Assembly: GCA_047495785.1 (NCBI GenBank) | Contig: JBLDXI010000019.1 | Span: forward strand, 124,001 to 188,000 | Source: Lepidodermella squamata | Lineage: Eukaryota; Animalia; Gastrotricha | Direction: 5' to 3' | DNA: 64,000 nt | Shown: in pieces, positions 2,965 to 33,092 of the stretch | Numbering within the stretch: the first letter of the stretch is position 1 | How the letters are laid out: every line of letters starts with the position of its first letter | The notes under the pieces: generated by a model | The model's input: only the letters and a program-made list of their open reading frames with translations | Told to the model about the DNA's origin: nothing | Database searches by the model: none | Made by a program: the position numbers and the translations under genes

Positions 2965-3279
2965 ATGGTTTCCGCTTTTTCCTCTTGAGTAGGTACCTTA
3001 AATTATGACAATTATCCTCGCTGTCTGCAATGGGCGCTCGCGTCGCAGATAAAAATCAGCACGAGCGGCTATCGCCATACGATAATTACACAGCGAGCTG
3101 AAGAAGAGAGAAAGCTCGCACTGTCGCTTAGTTGAAACTTCTAAACTTCAGACTGGTTAATTGTCATGCTGAATTATTTGGAAACTGACCTAATTTGTCG
3201 TGTTTACGAAAAGACAAGCAGAGTGGCGCAGTGGAAGCGCGCTGGGCCCATAACCCAGAGGTCTGTAGATCGAAACTAC

Positions 3280-4442
3280 CCGCTCCCCACCCGCTTTTGC
3301 TTGTGCTCCCCTTTTGTTCTTGGGACTAATACTGTATGGACTCGACACTGCTAGCATCTCTCCATTAAAATCCTGCTGGACGCAAAAAACCGTCCAACAA
3401 ATCTTGGTCGTAAAGTCGTTCAAAAATCGCGAGAAAAAAATCGTTTTAAACGAGCCTTTTTACGCATGCACCCATTAAATGGAGAGAAATCGGAGTCTCC
3501 TCCCGTTGGTACCGTATCACACCTTACCTTTACATTGGATTGCGTTGAAATTTACATTACTGAATTCTACATGAGAGGACCTTTGCAACGGTATGAACCA
3601 TGACCTGATGGGTGCTGAATCTACTTCGCTAAATTGATGTTTCTAACAGAATGCGTGAAACTTTCTAAAAATAGAACCGAATTATTTACGCTGATTTATT
3701 CATATAAAAAAATAAGAGAGAATATTCATGACTCATTCAATAATTTTTTGCTATTTTTTTATTCTCTCAAAAATGGCAATTTCTGTCTAAAATTCGAAAT
3801 AAAATTGTAGCACAGTCATAAAATTTTAAACTTGGCACTGTTGCAAAGATCGTGACCTGAGCTATCGATATTCGTAAAAACTAAGTCTTTATCTCTCGGC
3901 ATGGCATGTCCATACGGTGTTCTCTTCGAACCTTTCCTATTTTTGGCTTTGTAACGGGCGGATGCGTAAAAATGATGCTTTTAATGCGTAAAAAATCATT
4001 TTTTCATGCGATTTTCTCGCTTCGAAATTATTGATTTTTTTCCTGTTCAGCAGAAAAGTGGCTAGTGTCGAGTCCATACAGTATTGGTCCCAAGCTTTTG
4101 TTACATGTTGTTCCTGGCCCCTGACGCCCTGCCGTTCTGAGTTCCTGTTGGGCCAAGGGTGGCGGCGCGTGTAAACGGCGGCCCGTGTGCAGAAATTCCT
4201 GTCTTTCCAGTCTCCAGTATCCTGCCCAGCTGATCAACTCGCCGTCGCCGCTAGACTGTAACTTTTGTCTATGTGTCACTGTCTCGCTGTGTTCCACTAT
4301 GACTATCATCTGGCTGTCTTTTTCCCTACTCTTTCTTTTACCATTATATAGATAAAATTGTACGTGTGCTGTAATGTCCCGCCGGTTTAACCTACGGGTT
4401 GCGGCGCTGTGAATTTTTGCTTTTCGATCAATAAATCATTCC
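3280..4442 (+). mobile_element. Insertion in tRNA-iMet; probable 5'-truncated non-LTR retrotransposon 3' end (~380 bp after removing a nested MITE)
   Basis: Flanked by ACTAC duplication, no TIR or LTR termini, pyrimidine-rich, 3' hairpin at 4380-4406 and AATAAA at 4430-4435 just before the junction. Confidence 0.6.
3319..4094. mobile_element. MITE with 8-bp TSD nested in the tRNA insertion
   Basis: TIR CTTGGGAC(T/C)AATACTGTATGGACTCGACACT; TSD CTTTTGTT at 3311-3318 and 4095-4102. Confidence 0.9.
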
Positions 4443-4694
4443 ACTACGCTCTGCTAATGTCACTTTTTTGCAGTATCTATTTTGCCCTTGGTTTGACGAT
4501 TCTCTTACATCAGGAAGAGCCTATCGCCTTCTTCTTGACAGGAAAAACTGAAAGATCCTTATTTTGTAATATAATAGTACATAACTCAATTTTCAGCACA
4601 AAATAATTTATTGCAAAATACAACATGAAAAGACTGATAAGACTGCAGTTAGAGAGCTTCGATATCATCATGTATCATTCTGACCACTCGGCTG

Positions 4695-5699
4695 TTAGCG
4701 CAAATTACCGTAAACAATTAAACAAGGTATCACAAGCATCCAAAGGATGCTGCAAACAAATACTACAACTGAGCTCAGTATGAGTGCCGCTCGATAAGTT
4801 TCGAAGGATCCTCTCTTCTTCACGATGGTCATAAGCAATGGAACCCAGAGGCAAAATAGAATTGGGCACAAAACGAGAGCAGTTATCGTCAAAATTAGAG
4901 CGGCTTTATGACATCGCGGCGCGGTAGGATCGATCTGAAGTTCCAAATCAGGCATTCCAAATTGTTCACTCAATTTCTTTGCCGATTGAATCCGTTGCTT
5001 CTTTCGATGTCTTTTACTCGACTTGGCCGGTTTGCTAATTTGAATCGGCAGGATTGGTGTCGAAGCATAAGCAGGGGACATTGGTGATGTTGGTGACAAT
5101 GGTGTGATCGGTTGTAGACGTGGTGATATTACGGGGACTTGGAAGACTCTGTTATCCGAAGCTTCAAGAGCTGGCAGAGGTGTTGGCCGATTCCTTATCG
5201 GCGCTGTCCGCAACGGGGGCGGGATAATAGTTGACTCGAAAACGTTGTCGGAAACAATTGAACGAGCGGTTCTGACCGCGGCAGTTTCAGACTCGAAGAC
5301 TCTGTTGTCCGAAGCTTCAAGAGCTGGCAGAGGTGTTGGCCGATTCCTTATCGGCGCTGTCCGCAACGGGGGCGGGATAATAGTTGGCTCGAAAACGTTG
5401 TCGGAAACAACTGAAGGAGCGGTTCTGGCCGCGGCAGTTTCAGACTCATCGAAGACGCTGTTGTCGACAGATGGAGCAACGAAGTTTGGATAGGTTGAAT
5501 CAGAGCTGATTGAAGACCGGGCTATCAAGCCTCGAGGCAGGTAAAACCGGTTTGTTTGAAGCGACCATCTTTCTCCTGTGGTAGAGGGTATAATAGGCCG
5601 ACCAGCTGGCCCAGATGTTGTTGGAATGACGATATTCGGAACGATATTCGGCAAATCGGAAGCTGGTGTGTAAATATTATATTCCGCTCCGAAATGCAT
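4695..5699 (-). CDS. Proline-rich membrane protein with C-terminal dispanin/CD225-like double hydrophobic segment
   Basis: 334-aa ORF; long P/S/T-rich N-terminus; C-terminal ALILTITALVLCPILFCLWVPLL...YRAALILSSVVVF shared in pattern with other genes in the window. Confidence 0.75.
   Translation of the reverse strand: MHFGAEYNIYTPASDLPNIVPNIVIPTTSGPAGRPIIPSTTGERWSLQTNRFYLPRGLIARSSISSDSTYPNFVAPSVDNSVFDESETAAARTAPSVVSDNVFEPTIIPPPLRTAPIRNRPTPLPALEASDNRVFESETAAVRTARSIVSDNVFESTIIPPPLRTAPIRNRPTPLPALEASDNRVFQVPVISPRLQPITPLSPTSPMSPAYASTPILPIQISKPAKSSKRHRKKQRIQSAKKLSEQFGMPDLELQIDPTAPRCHKAALILTITALVLCPILFCLWVPLLMTIVKKRGSFETYRAALILSSVVVFVCSILWMLVIPCLIVYGNLR
5141..5440. repeat. 150-bp (50-aa) in-frame tandem duplication inside the 334-aa CDS
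   Basis: SDNVFE(P/S)TIIPPPLRTAPIRNRPTPLPALEASDNRVF occurs twice with near-identical DNA. Confidence 0.9.
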
Positions 5700-7126
5700 T
5701 ATTTTTCGACTACAGCAACTAGTGCCAAGCTATGTGTATTGTAGTAGTTGAATGCAAGTCTCGGTGGGCACATCGTCATACGACTAGTGCGCGTTGAATG
5801 AAAAAAGGCTAAACATGTAATACCTGAAAAGAACAGGTGAAAACATCACGTTTATATGTCGTGAGTATAGCAAGCCAGTACGGCAGTATCACTTGCTTTC
5901 CCTGGCACGCTAACCGCCTCCGTTTGTGTTGAAGACCGGCATATGTGAGAAAGGTATCATCCTACCGTCATATTACCCTATTTTAATAATCTGCCCACTA
6001 GCTTCCTCGAAAACAATTGAACAGCATGAACTTTAGACTTGCAGCAGTGGGTAATGATTAATGATGAGTAATATAGTTTATACTCTGTGGCAGTCATATT
6101 TAAATTAAATATTCCGATTACCTACCTGACTTCTACCTAGAAATCGTTTGAGTTGAAATTTCTCAAATGGAAATTTCTTTTTAAGAAAAAACTGGAGAAG
6201 TGATCGCGTGAAAAAATAAAACATTATATCAGTTTAGCGATAAAATTGGGTATCAGAGTTTGTTGATAATTACCATTAAATATTTGAATTGAACATAAAT
6301 AATTGATACCATTCAAATTCATCAGGAATATATTAATTATAGGCATGTTTGAACGCGAACTCCCTGTAGGTATTAACTATTGTATAGTTCTATTGCGGTA
6401 GAATTCTGACGCATATTTAATTTATTTGAAAAAAAATGTTGCGGTTTAAGGGCGGGATAAATTCGCCGGTGGACTAATGAACTCAGTCTCCAGCTACATT
6501 TCCTTGTTTTCCTTGTATTTTCTTGGGACTCAAAATTTCCATCGGGACTAAGACAACATGGCGTCTCAGCACCTAACCCTTGCCGACCCTAAAATCGAAA
6601 AAAATTTTGAAGATTTTTTCCCTGGAATTGTGGCCAAAATCAAATCTCGCCATCTTCAAGTTTTATGGAACTCAACAGGGCGACCCCGCGACTCTCAGCT
6701 GACCTATAGAATAGAACCCGTGGCCCCAATTTTGAGAAGCGTGGGACCAAGATAATCCCACGGCAATTTTTCATACTGTAATCGCAGGAGATCGATTTCG
6801 CAATTTCAACTTGGACCGCAATTGCCAAAAGATTCCTCTCAGAGAGAAAAATTGGCTGGTTAACTTTTAAAATTCACGAGACCGAGAATGAGTTCGTAGC
6901 TTTAACCCTTTCACGGCGGGAAGGACGATTTCGGAATTTCGACTTTGAAAATTCACAGAAAATTGAATTCGATGAATTTTTGATCGCCCTTTTCAGGATT
7001 ATTGCTTTTCGATGTTGGCTACAAGGTTTCGAGACCAGGGCGCCGTTATCTTGCATGGTCAGGACATACAAGCAGTTTGAAAATAGTCAACCTGAGATTG
7101 GAATTTCGATTTTTTTCAACTTGAAA

Positions 7127-11554: not shown

Positions 11555-13670
11555 CCCATATCGGCAAAATTTTGCTGGAAACAGCTGGAAAAACAGGTCA
11601 GCTGGAAAGAGGTGGCACATTTTAAAATGTGCCAGGTATTTCCAGCAAACTATTTCCAGCTATTTCCAGCAGTATTTCTCCACGTTATTCCAGGTGATTC
11701 AAATACTTCGTGTTTTCCCTCTAGCTTCAATTAATCAAAAAGAGACAAATGAACTCTATCAGTATTTTATTCAAAAAGTGAATAAGCGCCAGAGACGTAT
11801 ACGAGTATGCATCAGGCACAGGTAGATTTCCGTTAGAATTGCTTCCTCAGCAACGGCTGGGTCTTCAATTTTCGCCAATCGCTTCTTCTCCGCCGGTTGC
11901 TTTGTCTTCTTGTTGTTTCGAGCCGAGTCACTCGCAGCCAATCACGATACATGATGACCTCCATCTTTCAAACTTCACTCGATTCGAGCACCATACCGGC
12001 TCCAAGGACTATACCTGAAAACAATAAGAATGTTTAGCAGCAGACAACTAACATGAGGGCACTCTTACCGTAATTCGTACTGCTTGCCAAGTATTAAGAT
12101 TTAAGGGACGGCACCGGCTATGGGTTTGAACCCTTTTCTTTGCCCACCCTGTTAATAGCAAATATAGATTCCCAGGCATAAGCATTAAGTCTCCTCTTAC
12201 CTGCTGAGCCAGCGAAGTAGATTCGAGCCATTTGAACATTCTCAATTGTCACCTGCTGGAGACAGCCATCGGAACTTGAAACCGTAGACAATTTGCCGAG
12301 TTTCTAGCTGAAATACAATTAGTTTTGATATAACTTCAGCATCGGGATAATTACCTTGAGAGTCATTGCCACGCTTCGCCATGAACCTCCTTAATTCGGC
12401 CGTTTAGTCTAACAGAAAATTAAAAGTAAGATTTCGCAACTAGACATAACAATGTTTAATCACTCACGATATTGAAGAAATCAATGATAAGTGTTGAGAA
12501 AAATTAAAGGCCCAAACCCTATGCTTTCCAGCTATAGCGAACTTTATGTTACGAATGACGATGAAAAGTAATAATTAACGATGTGGCTTGCTAGTCTGCG
12601 CGCGTGCCTTATTTTATTACCCCTAATAATGCGAACCGCCGACCCAAAAATGCGTGCAGGCCATAGAGAACAGAAGTACAAGAGAGGAAACTCACGCTGG
12701 AAACTTGAAACATTAATTCGAAGCGGTTTTTTTAAGCCGGATCTTTTCACAAAATGCGCGTTCTTTTTTAGCGCACTTTTCTCGCTCAAACCCACCAAAT
12801 TTCGGCAAAGCTTTTCTCCGGCTTTACTACTTCAAATCGGATTCCCCTTTTTATGGTGAATAGACCTGGTCTTGAACTTCAAAAGTGCAAAAGGTTAGGT
12901 CGATATATGCAACGGCTAAGCCTTGGCATCCTTTGGAAGCTGAAAAAATTCAGCGAAAAATTTCGCAAAAATAGCTCATTTTCGACGAATTTCGACGAAA
13001 TTCGTTGAAAATGGGCTATTTTTGCGAAATTTTTCGCTGAATTTTTTCAGCTTCCAAAGGATGCCAAGGCTTAGCCGTTGCATATGTCGACCTAACCTTT
13101 TGCAATTTTGAAGTTCAAGACCAGGTCTATTCACCATAAAAAGGGGAATCCGATTTGAAGTAGTACAGCCGGAGAAAAGCTTTGCCGAAATTTTGTGGGT
13201 TTGCGCGAGAAAAGTGCGCTAAAAAACTACGCGCATTTTGTGAAAAGATCCGGCTTAAAAAAACCGCTTCGAATTAATGTTTCAAGTTTCCAGCGTGAGT
13301 TTCCTCTCTTGTACTTCTGTTCTCTATGCCTGCCTATTAAAGTTCAGCGCTGACGCAACGACGGCGAATAAATAATAGGCGAGCAAATTCCGATTGAAAA
13401 TTGCTGCATAAAGTATTTAGTGGAAGAAATGAGGTGGATTTTTTTCTACGAGTACAATTGTGTCTGGATAGAATGTTCAGCTTTCTCCAGCTGATTTTCC
13501 TTATTTTACGGACTTAGGCTATTTCGTCGCTTTGAATGCTACCTGGAATTAGCTGGAATTTTTCTAACCAACTTTCTCCACCTCTTTCCACTTGTCTGGA
13601 CGAATTTCCAGCTATGTCCAGCTTCGGTTTGAAATTCCAGCTATCTCCAGCAAGAAAATGCCGATATGGG
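11555..13670. mobile_element. 2.1-kb non-autonomous TIR element with CCC...GGG termini and 2-bp TSD (CMC/EnSpm-like)
   Basis: ~36-bp imperfect TIR CCCATATCGGCA...TTGCTGGA..AGCTGGAA; CA on both flanks; subterminal CCAGC/GCTGG motif arrays. Confidence 0.7.
12662..13328. repeat. Near-perfect 667-bp palindrome (333-bp arms, 1-nt spacer at 12995)
   Basis: CATAGAGAACAGAAGTAC...GTACTTCTGTTCTCTATG; arm coordinates are symmetric about 12995 (no net indel) with only scattered substitutions. Confidence 0.95.
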
Positions 13671-21467: not shown

Positions 21468-21539
21468 TCCCTGATGGTCTAGTGGTTAGGATTCCGCGTT
21501 CTCACCGCGGCGGCCCGGGTTCGATTCCCGGTCAGGGAA
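21468..21539 (+). tRNA. tRNA-Glu(CTC)
   Basis: 72-nt cloverleaf TCCCTGA...CCGCG TT CTC AC CGCGG...GGTTCGATTCC...TCAGGGA A; T7 terminator at 21541. Confidence 0.97.
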
Positions 21540-21610
21540 CTTTTTTTCATTTTCCGTTTTTTATTTTATTTTTTTTTAATTTCAAATTATTTATTTTGTG
21601 AGCTATTTAT

Positions 21611-21908
21611 GGCTGGAAGCAGTGGCGTGCTTCTGTGACTCAGCGACTTGAGGGCCGGGCTTGGCGAATGGGTGGCCGGTGGGAGCCCTGTCTGCGGATG
21701 TCACATGTCGATCGAGCGCCCCGTGTAAGTACGCCATCAACATGGTCGGTGCGGCGGAGGCCGTACTGCCCAGGTTGCGTAATGACACGTCAAAGGTCAG
21801 GTCCTGACGGAAGCAGCCTAACGATGTGCGTGGTGAGCGGTACCGGGACAGTGCTTGTGAATGTGCGCCGCAGTCAGCCCATCGGTTCACACAAACCCAA
21901 ATCTTTTT
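21611..21908 (+). ncRNA. 7SL (SRP) RNA, copy 1
   Basis: ~295 nt collinear with metazoan 7SL: Alu-domain 5' end with UGU motif, CATCAACATGGT, helix 6 with GGAG loop, CCAGGTTGCGTAA, helix 8 GGTCAGGTCC-TGAC-GGAAGCAGCC, TGTGAAT, terminal oligo-T. Confidence 0.92.
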
Positions 21909-21952
21909 CCGCTTTTTAAAATTTTTTAAAATTTAATTTCCCACTTTAGGCA

Positions 21953-24305
21953 ATGAAATTATCAGATTATTTAGTGCTCATATCGGCAGTAGTAGCTCGA
22001 AGTTACGCCGCGGCTAGTAACAACCAAAAACACCACAAAGGCCAATCAGGCCCTCGCCCACCTCCAGGTGGCCATCACCATGGCCACGTGAACATGGCCC
22101 ACGTTCTGGAGCACATCAACGACGACTACTCAAATCACCCATGTCGCCGCGATTGCGAGGAATACCCGGCGCCTATGGTTTGCGAGTACCGCATGCACGT
22201 TGCCTGGTACACAACAATGGGCCGAGCGTGTTACTTTTGCCCGTCGATCCTCTCCGATTGCATGAAACCAGGCTGTATACCAGGCTCTGGAACTCAACGC
22301 GGCGTTGTAGTCGCTAATCGCCAATTGCCCGGTCCTTCAATCGAAGTCTGCATCGGCGATCGGATTCGGGTTAACGTCGTTAATATGATGCAAAATGGCG
22401 AGACTCTGACCATTCACTGGCATGGAATACCCCAGCGTGGGACACCCTATATGGACGGAGCAGCCATGATCACCCAATGCCCGATAATGCCTGGCGGTAA
22501 TTTCACCTACGACTTTGAAGCCGCAATACCTGGGACCTATTTCTGGCATGGCCACACCGGCGCCCATCGAGCTGACGGCCTAGCGGGTCCCCTGATCATC
22601 CGCACCCCATCCGACCCTCATCGCGAACTTTACGACAATGACAATCTACCGGCGATGATGATGCAAGACTGGTTCCCGAATGAGACCGGCATAAATCGAT
22701 TTGTGACTTATAACTTCGGAAACGCCAATTCGTCCCCGACTCAGCTTTTATTCAACGGAATATGGACCGAGCCGAACGCCGGTCGAAAATCTGATAAATC
22801 CGATGAAGATAACCCGTTACCCCCGTTCCCTATCCCACTTCCACCCGTTGAAATACGCGTCGAAGCTGGGCAACGTTATCGTTTCCGCCTGATTAACAAC
22901 GCATTTTGGCTAACCCCAATTCGATTTACTATTGAAGGACATAATTTAGTGGTTATCGCGAGTGATGGCCAGCCAATTCTGCCTGTTGTGACTCGAAGCT
23001 TGACAATTTTGCCAGCCGAACGTTTCGACGTAATTCCTTACTTCACCGGCGATCAGATTTCAATGACTGGCTACTACACGATTAGCATGAAAGGGCTAGG
23101 CGATGGGGATGAGGGCGAGGCTTGTACCTATGCCAAGTTGATTTATCGCAAGGGCGAAATTCCGGCTCCGATGGATGCCATGCAGGCGACGAATGGACTT
23201 ACCAATCACGTGTTAGATGAGGTCAACTACTGGGATTGGACTAATTACAGGGCTAATGATGACGGCATGGTTGGGCGGAAAATTTCTCAGCTCAGGTCGC
23301 TCTATCAAGGCCAATATGTTACAGGAGTTCCAGACTTCAAACTGCTGGTCGAATTTGTAAGTTCTTGATTAATATTCAATAAATAGTAAATATTAATTTT
23401 GAGAATCTTAGATTTTAATGAATTTCTTAAATTTAAATATCAATTTTAAATCAAAATAAATATATTTTTTCAATTTCATTTTCAATTTTTAATTTGATTT
23501 TTTTCAGGATTTCGAAGAGGTTAGAGACCCTCGATTGGAGCCATTATATATCGCTCGAAAAGACTTCGAGCCGTCGAAATTTTTCCCGTCCACATTCATC
23601 ACACCTCGTCTCAATAAAATCACGAACCTAATGCCGCCTGTTCCTCTACTAACGCAAGAGAACGAAATTCCCGAGGACATGTTCTGCAATGCCCAAAACC
23701 GCAAATGCCCGCCTACCGAGTTCTGCGAGTGCATTCACGCCGTTGACATACCAGTTGGAGCATTGGTTGAGCTTGTGATGGTCGACAATGGGTTCTCTGA
23801 TGAAACAGTTGATTTTAACCACCCGATGCACATACATGGCTATCATTTCCGCGTCGTCGCTCAGGGCAAGCTCCACCTTAATCTGACGCGTCGTGAGGTC
23901 ATGGAACTGGACCTTTTCGGGCAGATTCCACGCAATCTTCATTACGCGCCGTTGAAAGACGTGATTGGAGTCCCGGCGGGTGGGTATACCATCGTGAGAT
24001 TTGTTGCTGATAACCCGGGCGCTTGGCTCTTCCACTGCCACATCGACTTCCACATGGAGTTTGGCATGGGCATGGTACTTCGCGTTGGCTACCAGCGTCA
24101 CTTGCCTCCGCCTCCACCTAATTTTCCGACTTGCTCTTATTCGGCTATGATGGCGGCTTTTATCGATAAATCAATCAATTATCAGCCACCTGGTTACTTG
24201 CCTCGAAAGCGAAATGCGGCCCATCTAAGGAATGACAAGGGTCAGAATAGAACAATTCTACCGTCTCCGTGGCCTGTTTCATCGTCTACGTCGCCTAGGT
24301 ACTGA
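21953..24305 (+). CDS. Secreted laccase-like multicopper oxidase 1 (intron 23357-23507)
   Basis: Signal peptide, His-rich and Cys-rich N-terminus, copper motifs HWHG, WHGH, HPMHIHG, HCHIDFHMEFGM; AATAAA near 24353. Confidence 0.95.
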
Positions 24306-24511
24306 ATGCGATGCTTTCGGGATTAAAATGTCGCACTTTTTCTTGATTTTATTAATAAAATTGAATAATATTTTAAAAGAAAGTGATCTTCTATGAAGCA
24401 AACTTAGGGATTAGGGATTAAACGGAAATTTAATCGGCTATTGCAGATCCTGAAACCTTCCTAATGTCATTCTTCGAATAAAAGGTAACATTTGGAGCCG
24501 AAAAAATATTG

Positions 24512-24810
24512 AAAAAAGATTTGGGTCCGTGTGGACCGATGGGCTGACTGCGGCGCACATTCACAAGCACTGTCCCGGTACCGCTCACCACGCACATCGT
24601 TAGGCTGCTTCCGTCAGGACCTGACCTTTGACGTGTCATTACGCAACCTGGGCAGTACGGCCTCCGCCGCACCGACCATGTTGATGGCGTACTTACACGG
24701 GGCGCTCGATCGACATGTGACATCCGCAGACAGGGCTCCCACCGGCTACTCATTCGCCAAGCCCGGCCCTCAAGTCGCTGAGTCACAGAAGCACGCCACT
24801 GCTTCCAGCC
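24512..24810 (-). ncRNA. 7SL (SRP) RNA, copy 2
   Basis: Reverse complement of copy 1 with about 5 substitutions; T6 terminator at 24517-24512. Confidence 0.92.
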
Positions 24811-24881
24811 ATAAAAAGCTTCTGTCAACTTGATCAAATCTGTCACTCTTGATTTATTGGAATGAGTATAAAAGCTACGAC

Positions 24882-24953
24882 AGGCCCAGGCGGGAATTGA
24901 ACCCGCGATCTTCTGTTTACGAGACAGACGCTCTACCACTAAGCTACTGAGCC
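24882..24953 (-). tRNA. tRNA-Thr(CGT)
   Basis: GGCTCAGTAGCTTAGTGGTAGAGCG TCTGT CT CGT AA ACAGA AGATC GCGGG TTCAATT CCCGC CTGGGCC T; 72-nt cloverleaf. Confidence 0.95.
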
Positions 24954-25141
24954 AGGCTGGAAAATTCGTAGATTCACAGAACTTTGCGGATCCACTAAAA
25001 CGTCTTATCAAGTAGGTATCATACTGCCCTGGTTTTTGGTAGTGTGATCAAAACTTGATTGATAGTTCGGATGCTGCCGAATGTAGCTTTTGTTGGGTAA
25101 GGTTGTTTCATGAGTTAAGGAGGCACGGTCAAATTCAGACA

Positions 25142-25213
25142 AGCAGAGTGGCGCAGTGGAAGCGCGCTGGGCCCATAACCCAGAGGTCTGTAGATCGAAA
25201 CTACGCTCTGCTA
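25142..25213 (+). tRNA. Initiator tRNA-Met(CAT)
   Basis: A1-U72 pair, GGG/CCC anticodon stem, ATCGAAA T-loop (eukaryotic initiator hallmarks); T5 terminator downstream. Confidence 0.97.
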
Positions 25214-25482
25214 AATGTCCATTTTTGACCCAGTCACGTTTTTTATCGCAAGTAATGGAATTTATTAAGGATGAGTGATCTATAAATAATTTTCTATTTT
25301 TCTCTCAACACGGAGCATAATAAAGCAATCGCTTCCCTCACATGTTGTTTCCAAGGATAGCTACCTCGATGGCGAGACTGATTGAAGCTTTGACTACATT
25401 GTCGTCTGTATCAGTCCTTAATGGTGTCAGTTAACAACCGGTCAACGGTCAAGCAATATTGACTTGATTAAGGAAAGGTTTT

Positions 25483-25902: not shown

Positions 25903-26761
25903 GCTTCGAGGTACCTTTTTATAAATAGGTCACGTTTCAAACGTTCATGAGCAATTTGAATTAATACCTTTGCATTCTGTCTTCCAACCATTGGACTATT
26001 GAGAATGAATTAAGTTGATGATAGAAATCACTAGAATGTGGAATACCATAGCATTTAAAAGTTTTAATACGGATCAAAATGACCACGATTAGTCAATAAT
26101 CAAGATAGTTTTGGCAAAATTTGGTGAATCGGGCAATTTGCACAGTTGGTTGGGGTAAATAAAATTTTCGAATAAAAATTGACTTATTTATTATAACTGT
26201 TAAAGTATCCGCATTAAAAAATGAACGGGTATATATGTTTTCCAAGGTTTTTGGGCGATGTTGTTTTTCATCCTTGACCATATTTAGATTATTATTTACA
26301 TTCAGCCCGCATAAATCGTGGTGTCGCGGGGTCGTGATTCTTCCCTGGGGACCCCGCACTCCACAGTGCACTTGACCACCAACCAATTTTTTTGTGGTAT
26401 TTTTAAATCCTATTTCTATTCTTACATTATTTACGAACCTATTTACTACAATTTGTAAAGGTCAAATTACGCATTAAATGCAGTCAAACTGGAGGGGGCG
26501 TGTTTAGCTTTTATTTTCAGGAGTAAGCCACCTCCGCAGGTTCCAGTGTGGCTACACCGGCTTGATTTAATACAATTATATACCGTTTATTCTCACTCCA
26601 ATGGTATGAAGGTTCAGTAAATGAAGCGCGATGAACTGAAGATCAAGAGGGAAAACTCGTAATATCGCATCTGTTGAAACTTCAATCCAAAACTCGGACA
26701 GGTTAATTGATGTCATCTCAATTGGTAATTTGACCTAATTTATCAAGATTACACAGAGACA

Positions 26762-26833
26762 AGCAGAGTGGCGCAGTGGAAGCGCGCTGGGCCCATAACC
26801 CAGAGGTCTGTAGATCGAAACTACGCTCTGCTA
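26762..26833 (+). tRNA. Initiator tRNA-Met(CAT)
   Basis: Identical to the copy at 25142; long T-run terminator downstream. Confidence 0.97.
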
Positions 26834-26943
26834 AGCGTCACATTTTTTTTGCTCCGACCTCATTTATCGTTAAGGGATCTACAAAAGTTGGGTATGCACA
26901 AAAAGGCACAAAATACTTTTTTTCAAATAAAAAAAACGAAGTG

Positions 26944-27361
26944 CACTTTCATACATATTTATGTTGACAAAATTAACTTTCATACATATTTTTTTTCATA
27001 GAATCGTGTTTTTTAGCCAAATTGTGATTAGGAATTGGGGTTGGGGGTTGGAGTTAGGTACCAGGTTTCGGGTTAGGGTTAGGGTTAGGTTTAGGGTTTG
27101 GTTAGGGTTCAGGATTAAGGTTAGGGTTAGGGGAGTAGTTCGAGTTTCGGGTTTCTACGAAGCTCGATTTTTGGGCCCTTGCGCTTCCCCAATAACCATT
27201 TTCATGCGGAAAAAATTGACTACGCTTTCGGAACTCCGTTTTTCTTTTACATAAACCGAAAACTAGTCATCTGGCATTTCCCTAAGGTTTTCAGCTTGAA
27301 TTTAATTTAAGAAAATATGTATGAAAGTTAATTTTATCATACATATTCATGTATGAAAGTT
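26944..27361. repeat. Inverted-repeat element with internal degenerate (TTAGGG)n tract at ~27028-27132
   Basis: actttcatacatatt...aaaattaactttcatacatattt mirrored by aaatatgtatgaaagttaatttt...atgtatgaaagt; centre gggttagggttagggttaggtttaggg. Confidence 0.7.
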
Positions 27362-29696: not shown

Positions 29697-30822
29697 TGAA
29701 ACAATTTTAGTGAGCGGAAAAAAATGATTTCATCAATAATTTTACGTTCTCTTTATGATTCGCACGTGCCGTAAAAAAATAAAAAAAAAGGATGAAAACG
29801 ACAAAGGTTGAATTTGGATTAAAATTCTAAATGAATTACCGTATGGGAGGGTACTTTTGGACAAAACCGTATTTATTTGAGGATTGAAAAGCAGTCAAAA
29901 GTCAGAAAACGATGATTTTTTAGAGCTCCGATTTGGTGATTTTTAGATTCTTTCCTGATTTTTAGCGATAGACAACATGTACATGGCTGAAGTTGGACAA
30001 TTAGCTGGCCAAATTCCGGACACACTCATTTGCATATGGATAGCATTGTGAATGTTATGTTTTTCCTGTGTTTATTTGGGTCAAATTCGGAAAAGAAATT
30101 ATGCGCATTCCGCGCGCATTCAGAATAAATTGAGAAACTACATTTTTGTGCAACCGCATTTTTACAGTCAAAAATTGTCTGACTTCCACCTGAAAAATGT
30201 CAATGCCCTGCAAAATACAATCGATGAACCTTCATTTCTCTTTTGATAACTAAGAGAGCAGCGCTCGTTTAGTATACCCATGCCAATTTCCTCCCCAAAA
30301 TATTCATTTTTTTGGGAGATTGTCCATTTATAACATTTCTTAAACATCAAGTATTGCTCCAATCACCTCGGAACTCGCGCCAATCAATATCTCAGAACTC
30401 AGAAAACGGGGAATTTTACGCAACAAACCCAGTGTTGTTATCGTTACAAATCTATAAGTCGATTGCGTTCACCTGCGAAGCCGAAGTGTCCAACATTTAT
30501 CCTGCGCCACGGTATAGACCATACTTTTTCCGTTTCAAGTAATTTTTGAAGTTATTTCCTTTCGTGTGCTTGTTTACATCTTTCGGATTTTTTGAGCGTT
30601 TTTGTTTAGAAAAAAAACACCCAATGTTTGATTAACAAACTGGCGTAGTATCGTTCCAATGTTTCCAATGTTTATGTTCATCCTGAATGTGAGAATTCGC
30701 ACATCAATTAACGGCGCGGCGATAAACATGTTTTAGCACAAATAATTGGCTGTTTGTTGATCATTGTTTTGGTGTCTGTGATTGTGACCGCTGCCTGGCA
30801 TTGTCTCGCCATATCAAGTAAA

Positions 30823-33092
30823 ATGGCTCACATCATTTTTATAGAAATTTTCCTCCTTTTGGCTGCTAGCCAAATTTTTAGCCAGCCTCATTTAAGCGCT
30901 CAATTTCAGATAAATCAGTTAGAGGAAAGAGCGTACTCCCGAGATGAAATCTACGACGATTTTTCGAACCACCCGTGTCGTCGAAAATGCAAACCCGAAG
31001 CTCCGCCCATGCTTTGCGACTACGAAATGCAAGTCTCGTGGTACACAACAATGGGTCGGGCGTGCTTCTACTGCCCTAACGTACTAGCCGACTGTATAAA
31101 ACCCGGCTGTTTACCGGGCAGTGGCACCCAGCGCGGCGTTGTAGTCGCAAATCGCCAGCTACCCGGCCCGGCTATTGTCGCATGCGTCAACGACAGAATT
31201 CGCGTCAATGTCGTGAATCAAATGCAAAACGGCGAGAGTATCACAATCCACTGGCACGGCGTCCATCAACGCGGTTCGCCCTATATGGACGGTACAGCAT
31301 GGGTTAGCCAGTGCCCAATCACCCCAGGGGCTAATTTCACATATGAGTTCGACGTCCCGATAGCTGGGACCTATTTTTGGCACGGCCATATGGGCGCTCA
31401 TCGGGCGGATGGTCTAGCTGGTCCGCTGATTGTCCGTAACCCTCATGACCCTCATCGGCCTCTTTATGATAAGGACGACATCGCCCTAATGGTTCAAGAC
31501 TGGTTCCCTAGCGATGTAGGAATCAATCGATTTGTCACCTATAGCTACGGCAGCGGGCAAAACGTGCCTCCCTTGTTACTTCTCAACGGAATTCGGGCCG
31601 ATCCTAATTGGAATTATTCCTCATTCACGTCGTCATATTTCGATAAATTACCCCCATTTCCAGTTCCACTGCCGCCGAATGAGTTCCTATTAGAGCCAGA
31701 GTTGCGTTACCGATTTCGAGTTATCAATAACGCGTTCATGTTAACACCAATTCGACTGACAATTCAGGGGCATAATTTAGTAGTTATCAATTGTGACGGT
31801 CGTCCTGTGATGCCTGTAGTTGTTAAGAAGATCACTGTGTTGCCAGGCGAGCGATTTGATTTTATTCCCTACTTCACTGGGGAGCATTACTCGAAAGAGG
31901 GCGTTTATCAGTTGACGGTAACAGCTCTGTTAAGGGATAACTGGCATACCAGTCCTACAACCTATGCCCATCTCGTTTACAAGGATCGAACTTCCCCGGC
32001 TAAGTCAGACCCTGGTCTAGCAACTAATGGCGCGTCTAGTCACGTTGTCGATGAGCTAAATTACCTGGATTGGAACAAAAAAACTCGATATGACGTGGAT
32101 AATGGGGTAAATATCGGGGGAATGAATGTCGCCCAGCTGAGATCGATCTACCACGGTCAAGATATGGATCGACCAGCTGATATCAAATACTTTATCGAAT
32201 TTGTAAGTTTTTTCGAGGTAAAATAATAGAAATATATTGACGAATATTTCAGGATTTCGAACTGGTTGATGATCCGAAATTGGAGCCGTTGTTCGATGCT
32301 AGGACTGCCGTTCACTTTTCCGACCATTTCCCAGCGACTTTTTTGACGCCGCGGCTCAATCGAATCACAAACACTGTCCCACCTGTCCCGCTTTTGACCC
32401 AGGAAGAAGAAATACCCGAGGAGATGTACTGCAACGCCTATCACCGAAAATGCCCGTCATCCGAATTCTGCGAATGCATCCACGTTTTGGACGTACCTTA
32501 CGGAGCTCTTGTTGAGATGATTCTCATCGACAACGGCTTTTCGGATAACCACCACGGCTACCATCATCCGATGCATCTTCATGGTTATCATTTCCGCGTT
32601 GTCGCACAGGAAAAACTCCACCTTAACTTAACCCGCCGAGAGATAATGGAACTCGACGCATTTGGCCAGGTCGAGCGGAACTTGAAGTACGCCCCGCTTA
32701 AAGACGTTATCGGCGTGCCAACTGGCGGTTATACGATTATAAGATTCGTCGCTGATAACCCGGGCATTTGGCAGTTTCATTGCCAGATTGATGTTCACAT
32801 GGAGCTAGGAATGTCCCTTGTGCTGAGGGTGGGCGATCGCCGGCACGTCCCGCCTCCGCCGGACAATTTCCCACGCTGTTCCCACCCGTCGTTTTCGGCC
32901 GCCTTAAAAAATTGGCAAAATCGACAACGGCCAGAGTATCGCATAAAGCGGCGAAATGCTAGGAGCAAAGCGGCTGTAGCTAAGATGAAAGGAGCTTTAA
33001 AGCACGACCAAGGCAGCACCAAGTTCGAAAACACTACGACAGCTGATGCAGAGAAAAATACGACCCACGAACCTGGCTTTAACCTACCTTAA
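30823..33092 (+). CDS. Laccase-like multicopper oxidase 2 (intron 32203-32252)
   Basis: Paralog of oxidase 1 with the same intron position; HWHG, WHGH, HPMHLHG, but HCQIDVH in place of HCH. Confidence 0.93.

What the first reader, a model, noticed from the sequence alone, without database searches (positions are those of the whole stretch)
21468..24953. Two tRNA-7SL cassettes with different tRNAs but an identical 71-nt spacer
Seen: tRNA-Glu(CTC) ends at 21539 and 7SL starts at 21611 (spacer 21540-21610); tRNA-Thr(CGT) ends at 24882 and 7SL starts at 24810 (spacer 24881-24811). Both are head-to-tail with 71-nt spacers whose sequences are unrelated except the last ~10 nt (agct(a/t)tttat). Simple duplication would keep the same tRNA, so distance appears to be what is conserved. 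The first spacer has several long T-runs, which argues against a dicistronic read-through transcript. Known: trypanosomatid 7SL and U6 genes use A/B boxes of an adjacent, divergently oriented tRNA gene. Inference: a tandem tRNA-as-promoter arrangement for 7SL in an animal, which I do not know to be described. With only two cases, coincidence cannot be excluded.
Basis: partly seen in the sequence, partly recalled or inferred. Interest (0 to 1): 0.85.

Follow-up and report, generated by a model that had tools for sequence, protein, structure and literature searches.

The report
tRNA genes fixed upstream of 7SL
Two nearly identical signal-recognition-particle RNA genes of a small invertebrate each sit exactly 72 bases behind a different tRNA gene, which suggests, without proving it, that tRNA genes help switch on these genes, a habit known so far only from trypanosome parasites.

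Summary
tRNA-Glu(CTC) (21468-21539, +) lies before 7SL-A (21612-21906, +). tRNA-Thr(CGT) (24953-24882, -) lies before 7SL-B (24809-24515, -). That puts the tRNA B box at -94 and the A box at -137 from both 7SL starts.

The 7SL copies differ at 5 of 295 positions. Homology starts at -11 (AGCT[A/T]TTTATG) and fades just past the T-run terminator. The remaining 61 nt of each spacer are unrelated: 16/61 identical, below the shuffle mean of 18.2. No motif is shared in position. Each spacer holds a T-run of five or more, so co-transcription is unlikely.

I could get no RNA evidence and no other 7SL loci.

Other agents of this scan have already reported, on other DNA of the same genome, more tRNA-Thr to 7SL cassettes and genome-wide tRNA-then-snRNA cassettes for U1, U4 and U2. 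I did not check those notes.

My best reading is that the tRNA gene is a fixed-distance upstream helper for a separately transcribed 7SL gene (confidence 0.42). Coincidence, close packing and targeted insertion remain open. I found no paper describing this arrangement in an animal.

The parts
21468..21539 (+). tRNA-Glu(CTC), intact, canonical A box (tRNA positions 8-18) and B box (51-61)
21540..21611 (+). Spacer A: 72 nt, 85% A+T, with T7 directly after the tRNA, then T4, T6, T4, T9, T4
21601..21611 (+). Conserved motif AGCTATTTATG at -11 to -1, shared 10/11 with cassette B. It is the start of the 317-nt homologous unit.
21612..21906 (+). 7SL-A (SRP RNA), full-length Metazoa_SRP match, ending in a T5 terminator
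   Evidence: 179.8 bits, gathering score 70
24515..24809 (-). 7SL-B (SRP RNA), full-length. It differs from 7SL-A at positions 60, 63, 276, 282 and 283.
24810..24820 (-). Conserved motif AGCTTTTTATG at -11 to -1. It contains a T5 run.
24810..24881 (-). Spacer B: 72 nt, 67% A+T, with T4 at +9 to +12 after the tRNA and T5 at -8 to -4 before 7SL
24882..24953 (-). tRNA-Thr(CGT), intact, A and B boxes at the same tRNA positions as in tRNA-Glu
25142..25213 (+). Initiator-type tRNA-Met, divergent from tRNA-Thr across a 188-nt gap. It is part of the three-gene unit that other readers noted elsewhere in the genome.
21953..24305 (+). Context: a two-exon multicopper oxidase (laccase) gene bracketed by the inverted 7SL pair (317-nt arms, 97% complementary)

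Best explanation
Each cassette holds two separate RNA polymerase III transcription units. One is an ordinary tRNA gene that ends at its own T-run. The other, 72 nt further on, is a 7SL gene that starts at G+1 and ends at its own T-run. What the two cassettes share upstream of 7SL is only an 11-nt start-proximal motif and a complete same-strand tRNA gene, with its B box at -94 and its A box at -137. I propose (inference) that TFIIIC and TFIIIB bound to the tRNA gene keep this stretch free of nucleosomes and rich in Pol III. This helps a 7SL gene that has no B box of its own and no conserved upstream PSE or TATA to assemble its initiation complex. The short motif and the first bases of 7SL would then fix the start site. 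Any tRNA gene would serve, which would explain why its identity can change (Thr or Glu) while its distance cannot. Shown here: gene identities, spacing, lack of spacer homology, terminators between the genes. Inferred: any effect of the tRNA gene on 7SL transcription.
For: Both 7SL genes are full-length and carry terminators. The tRNAs differ in type but sit at identical distances, with the A box at -137 and the B box at -94 in both. The first 61 nt of the spacers are no more alike than shuffled sequence, 16/61 against a mean of 18.2, so the equal length is not inherited from one recent duplication. No k-mer of 5 or more is shared in position between -72 and -12, so no common PSE- or TATA-like element is visible. 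Spacer B has no TATA-like stretch near -30. Homology is limited to -11 through +306. Each spacer has a T-run of five or more, which rules against read-through. Precedent: in trypanosomatids the A and B boxes of an upstream tRNA gene at a conserved distance drive 7SL and snRNA genes, together with an element in the first ~21 nt of the transcribed region (PMC4950102). Unchecked notes on the same genome report more tRNA-Thr to 7SL cassettes, and U1, U4 and U2 genes about 115 nt behind same-strand tRNA genes.
Against: Only two cases could be read here, and both lie in one 3.5-kb stretch. In the tandem orientation TFIIIC normally places TFIIIB upstream of the tRNA, away from 7SL. The tested trypanosomatid case is divergent, so the proposed mechanism has no tested precedent in this orientation. 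A follow-up agent judged a truncated tRNA remnant upstream of a U1 gene in this genome to be a leftover rather than a recruited control element. Another follow-up found that U1 and U4 keep their own ordinary promoters. 7SL may run on an internal promoter alone.
Confidence: 0.42

Rival explanations
1. Neutral by-product. Pol III genes cluster and are copied together in this genome, and the equal 72-nt spacing of the Glu and Thr cassettes is a coincidence with no role in 7SL expression. 7SL runs on internal or start-proximal elements only.
For: There are only two independent pairings. The window holds a local Pol III cluster: five tRNA hits and two 7SL genes, four of those tRNAs and both 7SL genes within 5.4 kb. 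7SL genes in yeast and human rely largely on internal or proximal elements (general knowledge). A follow-up on a triplicated tRNA/U6 block in this genome concluded ordinary local duplication.
Against: An exact match in length between spacers with no sequence homology is roughly a 1-in-100 event if spacings range over about 100 nt (my rough estimate). Both tRNAs are on the same strand as their 7SL. Other notes describe several further small-RNA families with a same-strand tRNA at a near-fixed distance.
Confidence: 0.24
2. Closest packing. Deletion bias has pushed the two Pol III units as close as their factor footprints allow (TFIIIC over the tRNA end plus TFIIIB over about -45 to -5 of 7SL). 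This gives a fixed minimum distance without functional dependence.
For: Both distances are identical and short. The spacer sequence is unconstrained apart from -11 to -1.
Against: Other intergenic stretches in the window are not squeezed to a minimum. For example, the gap between tRNA-Thr and tRNA-iMet is 188 nt. This rival does not explain why a tRNA gene should be the upstream neighbour in the first place.
Confidence: 0.12
3. Targeted placement. The 317-nt 7SL unit (-11 to +306) was copied into sites at a preferred distance downstream of tRNA genes by a tRNA-gene-targeting mobile-element machinery or a recombination hotspot.
For: The homologous unit has sharp limits and begins 61 nt after the tRNA end in both cassettes. 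Other readers noted tRNA-targeted retroelements in this genome, one of them inside this window at 3217-4456.
Against: The unit has no target-site duplication, no A-tail and no element sequence at its edges. It includes 11 nt upstream of the mature 5' end, which a retrocopy of 7SL RNA would lack.
Confidence: 0.1
4. Dicistronic gene. Pol III starts at the tRNA, reads through into 7SL, and RNase Z plus trimming release both RNAs, as in plant tRNA-snoRNA and Yarrowia tRNA-5S genes.
For: The order is tRNA first, on the same strand. Yarrowia 5S genes are fused behind six different tDNA types (PMC2566860). tRNA-Thr has only a T4 directly behind it.
Against: Spacer A starts with T7, followed by T6 and T9. 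Spacer B has T5 at -8 to -4. So each spacer holds at least one strong Pol III stop before 7SL. The known dicistronic genes lie immediately 3' of the tDNA.
Confidence: 0.06

Closest known systems
Trypanosomatid companion-tRNA promoters of 7SL, U6, U1-U4 and U3 genes (PMC4950102, PMC2695483)
   Same: A complete tRNA or tRNA-like gene sits upstream of a small-RNA gene at a conserved distance. Its A and B boxes are the only conserved upstream elements. A start-proximal or intragenic element is also used. The tRNA type varies between genes. The organism uses spliced-leader trans-splicing, according to other agents' notes on this genome.
   Different: There the tRNA is divergently oriented with the A box about 104-106 bp upstream. 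Here it is on the same strand, with the B box nearest (-94) and the A box at -137. There the dependence is shown by mutagenesis. Here nothing has been tested. This organism is an animal.
[quoted passage not shown]
   Same: A same-strand tRNA gene leads a second small-RNA gene. Several different tDNA types are used. The cassettes are amplified in the genome.
   Different: Those genes lie immediately 3' of the tDNA, have no terminator in between and are co-transcribed. Here 72 nt with T-runs of five or more separate the genes.
Yeast Pol III genes with displaced TFIIIC sites (SNR6 with a B box outside the transcribed region, RPR1 with A and B boxes in a removed 5' leader); from my own knowledge, not checked here
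   Same: The B box that serves a non-tRNA Pol III gene lies outside the mature RNA.
   Different: Those boxes are not part of a working tRNA gene. In RPR1 they are transcribed with the RNA.
Same-genome tRNA-then-snRNA cassettes reported by another agent of this scan (s1-429999)
   Same: A same-strand tRNA gene lies at a near-fixed distance upstream of small-RNA genes in what is stated to be the same genome.
   Different: Those are U1, U4 and U2 genes at about 115 nt that keep their own promoter. Here the genes are Pol III 7SL genes at 72 nt with no recognisable upstream promoter of their own. I did not verify that report.

Membership tests
Metazoan SRP RNA (Rfam RF00017) | Full-length match to the covariance model above the gathering score | tested here: met
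   179.8 and 178.3 bits against a gathering score of 70, model positions 1-299 of 299
Metazoan SRP RNA (Rfam RF00017) | Pol III terminator (T-run) at the 3' end | tested here: met
   T5 and T6 runs end the two genes
Trypanosomatid-type tRNA-dependent extragenic promoter | tRNA or tRNA-like gene with A and B boxes directly upstream of the small-RNA gene | tested here: met
   Intact tRNA-Glu and tRNA-Thr lie 72 nt upstream
Trypanosomatid-type tRNA-dependent extragenic promoter | Divergent orientation of the tRNA relative to the small-RNA gene | tested here: not met
   Both tRNAs are on the same strand as their 7SL. The divergent iMet next to cassette B starts 332 nt from the 7SL start.
Trypanosomatid-type tRNA-dependent extragenic promoter | Conserved distance from the boxes to the start site (A box about 104-106 bp) | tested here: inconclusive
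   The distance is identical in the two cassettes (A box -137, B box -94), but the value differs from the trypanosomatid one and n=2
Trypanosomatid-type tRNA-dependent extragenic promoter | Loss of small-RNA expression when the A or B box is mutated | not testable with these tools
   Needs transfection or in vitro transcription
Dicistronic tRNA-led Pol III genes | No Pol III terminator between the tRNA and the second gene | tested here: not met
   Spacer A has T7, T6 and T9. Spacer B has T4 and T5
Dicistronic tRNA-led Pol III genes | A precursor RNA spanning both genes | not testable with these tools
Type 3 (PSE + TATA) Pol III promoter | Shared upstream elements at fixed positions (PSE near -55, TATA near -25 to -30) | tested here: not met
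   No k-mer of 5 or more is shared in position between -72 and -12. A TATA-like stretch occurs near -25 in spacer A only. The genome's own PSE consensus was not available to me.

The most novel reading that the evidence does not exclude
In this animal (probably the gastrotrich Lepidodermella squamata) working tRNA genes serve, in tandem orientation and at a fixed distance, as required upstream promoter modules for 7SL. According to other notes they would also help U6, U3 and the spliceosomal snRNA genes. That would be a second, independent origin of the tRNA-dependent small-RNA transcription known only from trypanosomatids, again in an organism that uses trans-splicing.
Probability: 0.3. Interest if true: 0.85.

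Novelty: new variant of a known kind. Interest (0 to 1): 0.62.

Why it matters
Use of a neighbouring tRNA gene's promoter boxes by other small-RNA genes has been shown only in trypanosomatids and is treated as one of their oddities. A tandem, terminator-separated, fixed-distance version in a metazoan would show two things. TFIIIC-bound tRNA genes can be recruited as general activating modules more than once in evolution. Animal Pol III promoter types are also more varied than the three or four textbook classes. The natural 'swap' of tRNA type at unchanged distance gives a simple design for tests with B-box and spacer-length mutants.

Tried and rejected
1. The metagenome scan with the 7SL helix-8 pattern returned 117 loci. 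BLAST showed that they match only 24-32 nt of helix 8, so I take them for bacterial SRP RNAs.
No read or contig evidence was obtained.
3. I tried to fetch other 7SL-bearing contigs through chance ORFs that overlap 7SL. The antisense frame gave no hit. The sense frame gave only low-complexity hits against repeat proteins.
4. A 20-mer from the 7SL 5' domain found nothing in genome contigs or viral contigs.
5. Contigs carrying the nearest laccase relatives (L118-L122, 45-47% identity) hold no Rfam RNA genes.
6. Six literature searches on tRNA-linked 7SL or snRNA genes found the trypanosomatid and Yarrowia or plant cases but no animal case.
7. Identifying the organism from window proteins failed. 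The best laccase hits are 47% identical unnamed metagenome proteins, and the other ORFs have no informative Pfam family.
8. I considered and rejected an MDA-chimera assembly artefact for the inverted 7SL pair. The arms are only 97% alike, they are limited to the gene (317 nt), and they have unrelated flanks.
Full report
What is there. ARAGORN finds four tRNA genes in the window, and Rfam adds a fifth, weak hit at 3217-3288. Rfam finds two full-length metazoan-type SRP (7SL) RNA genes. 7SL-A is at 21612-21906 on the + strand (179.8 bits). 7SL-B is at 24809-24515 on the - strand (178.3 bits). The gathering score is 70. A permissive scan at E<=0.1 finds no further 7SL copy or fragment in the 64 kb. 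Directly upstream of each, on the same strand, lies an intact tRNA gene. These are tRNA-Glu(CTC) at 21468-21539 and tRNA-Thr(CGT) at 24953-24882.

Spacing. With the Rfam boundaries both spacers are 72 nt. The two lengths are equal on either count. Both tRNAs are 72 nt with their boxes at the same internal positions. The B box therefore starts at -94 and the A box at -137 from the first base of 7SL in both cassettes.

How the two cassettes are related. The two 7SL genes differ at five of 295 positions: 60, 63, 276, 282 and 283. All five lie at the base of helix 5 and are not clearly compensatory. The repeat finder gives inverted arms of 317 nt at 97% complementarity, 21601-21917 and 24504-24820. 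Homology starts 11 nt before 7SL (AGCTATTTATG against AGCTTTTTATG, 10/11 identical) and fades within about 11 nt after the T-run terminator. Outside this unit nothing aligns. The first 61 nt of the spacers are 16/61 identical without gaps. Shuffles of the same composition average 18.2, and 83% of them reach the observed value. No word of five or more bases is shared in position between -72 and -12. The tRNAs are of different types. So the upstream halves of the two cassettes show no sign of recent common descent, yet they place a tRNA gene at exactly the same distance.

Separate or joint transcription. Spacer A begins with T7 directly after the tRNA and goes on with T4, T6, T4, T9 and T4. Spacer B has T4 nine bases after the tRNA and T5 at -8 to -4. 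Each spacer thus holds at least one T-run of five or more, which in known eukaryotes stops Pol III (general knowledge). Both 7SL genes end in T5 or T6. I read the cassettes as two Pol III units each, not as dicistronic genes of the Yarrowia tRNA-5S or plant tRNA-snoRNA kind. Those lie immediately 3' of the tDNA and are co-transcribed (PMC2566860).

What could drive 7SL. Apart from the 11-nt start-proximal motif, the only upstream feature the two genes share is the tRNA gene. Spacer A has an A+T-rich, TATA-like stretch near -25, and spacer B has none. By eye I saw no canonical B box in the 7SL sequence that is kept in both copies. A GGTTCAC stretch near position 273 in copy A is GGTCCAC in copy B. 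This fits a model in which TFIIIC and TFIIIB on the tRNA gene keep the region open and loaded with Pol III, so that the adjacent 7SL gene can start. The -11 to -1 motif and the first transcribed bases would set the start site. The tested precedent is the trypanosomatid system. There the A and B boxes of an upstream tRNA or tRNA-like gene, with the A box about 104-106 bp from the start, plus an element within the first ~21 nt, drive U-snRNA and 7SL genes (PMC4950102; gene maps in PMC2695483). In that system the tRNA is divergent, so TFIIIB sits between the two genes. Here the orientation is tandem and TFIIIB for the tRNA would sit on the far side. The mechanism cannot simply be carried over, and that is the main weakness of the proposal.

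Evidence from outside the window. I could obtain none of my own.
- The single metagenome scan was wasted. The helix-8 pattern I chose is shared with bacterial SRP RNAs, and all 117 loci matched over 24-32 nt only.
- Chance ORFs over 7SL found no relatives in the protein collections.
- A 5'-domain 20-mer found nothing in genome or viral contigs.
- Contigs with the nearest laccase relatives hold no small-RNA genes.
- The run index lists several RNA and metatranscriptome runs (activated sludge, root, biofilm) that hold part of the cassette-A stretch near-identically. I could not lay them, so I cannot say which part they hold or whether 7SL is expressed there, and they say nothing about its 5' end.

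What the scan noted before. These are unchecked AI notes, used as leads only. The scan has found this kind of arrangement before on other DNA of the same genome.
- A 'tRNA-Thr - 7SL cassette in four copies, two with a divergent initiator tRNA-Met' overlaps the start of this window (s1-398169).
- The same three-gene unit is duplicated on another piece (s1-379839).
- A follow-up reports that most U4 and U1 genes, and about half of the U2 genes, sit about 115 bases behind a same-strand tRNA gene while keeping their own promoter (s1-429999).
- Further cassettes are noted for U1 with iMet, U4 with Gln, U6 and U3.
- One follow-up read a truncated tRNA remnant upstream of a U1 gene as a leftover, not a control element (s1-421498).
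If these notes hold, the 7SL cassettes are one part of a genome-wide habit. They would then be the case with the least independent promoter of its own. I could not verify any of them.

Organism. Metazoa_SRP is the best Rfam model. The enclosed gene is a two-exon multicopper oxidase whose best named relatives are arthropod, echinoderm and mollusc laccases at 40-44% identity. Other agents name the gastrotrich Lepidodermella squamata (s1-421969) or a rotifer (s1-429999). The published L. squamata assembly has 122 Mb, 157 contigs and 43% G+C (PMC11660948). That fits the window's roughly 42% G+C and the roughly 149 pieces the scan reports. The paper never uses the words tRNA, telomere or trans-splicing. 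That assembly came from MDA-amplified DNA, which can create inverted chimeras. The 7SL arms are only 97% alike, are confined to the gene and have unrelated flanks, so this is not such an artefact.

Novelty. Six full-text searches on tRNA-linked 7SL or snRNA genes found the trypanosomatid and the dicistronic yeast and plant cases. None describes a same-strand tRNA gene at a fixed distance upstream of 7SL in an animal. The library covers open-access papers only. I class the finding as a new variant of a known kind.

Verdict. The anatomy fits a fixed-distance tRNA helper and argues against co-transcription and against simple duplication. Function is untested, and only two cases could be read. My confidences are 0.42 for the tRNA-helper reading, 0.24 for coincidence within a Pol III cluster, 0.12 for closest packing, 0.10 for targeted placement and 0.06 for a dicistronic gene.

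Noticed in passing
window 21601-21917 and 24504-24820, enclosing 21953-24305: The two 7SL units form a 317-nt inverted repeat (97%) that tightly brackets a two-exon multicopper oxidase (laccase) gene. Its ATG lies only 47 nt after the end of 7SL-A and is preceded by a TTTAG acceptor-like site at 21944-21948, so the mRNA may be trans-spliced. Its stop codon lies 210 nt from the end of 7SL-B. A second laccase paralogue lies at 30754-33092.
   Followed up: partly
window 21795-21825 (7SL helix 8): Helix 8 has a UGAC tetraloop instead of GNRA. A 19-mer over it, with R at the loop's third base so that UGAC and UAAC both match, occurs in at least 117 metagenome contigs. They match 7SL over 24-32 nt only, and I take them for bacterial SRP RNAs. 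Other readers noted the same.
   Followed up: partly
window 25137-25226 and 26757-26846: Two initiator-type tRNA-Met genes share a 90-nt unit (94% identical) with unrelated flanks. Unlike the iMet genes that other notes describe upstream of U1, neither has a recognisable small-RNA gene behind it.
   Followed up: partly
window 27053-27132 and 24405-24420: Degenerate interstitial TTAGGG-type (GGGTTA) repeats.
   Followed up: no
window 12822-13140: A stretch matches three unrelated Rfam models (MIR8562, tsr1, Yfr17) on both strands, all below their gathering scores. It is probably a palindromic or simple repeat rather than an RNA gene.
   Followed up: no
window 3217-3288: A weak tRNA hit (34.7 bits) that ARAGORN does not call. 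Another reader describes it as an initiator tRNA split by a retroelement-like insertion (3217-4456). The 344-codon open frame at 4698-5729 (-), just beyond that insertion, has no Pfam match.
   Followed up: no
window 21671, 21674, 21887, 21893, 21894 (7SL positions 60, 63, 276, 282, 283): All five differences between the two 7SL copies cluster at the base of helix 5 next to the Alu domain and are not clearly compensatory. The minimum-energy fold of copy B changes there.
   Followed up: partly
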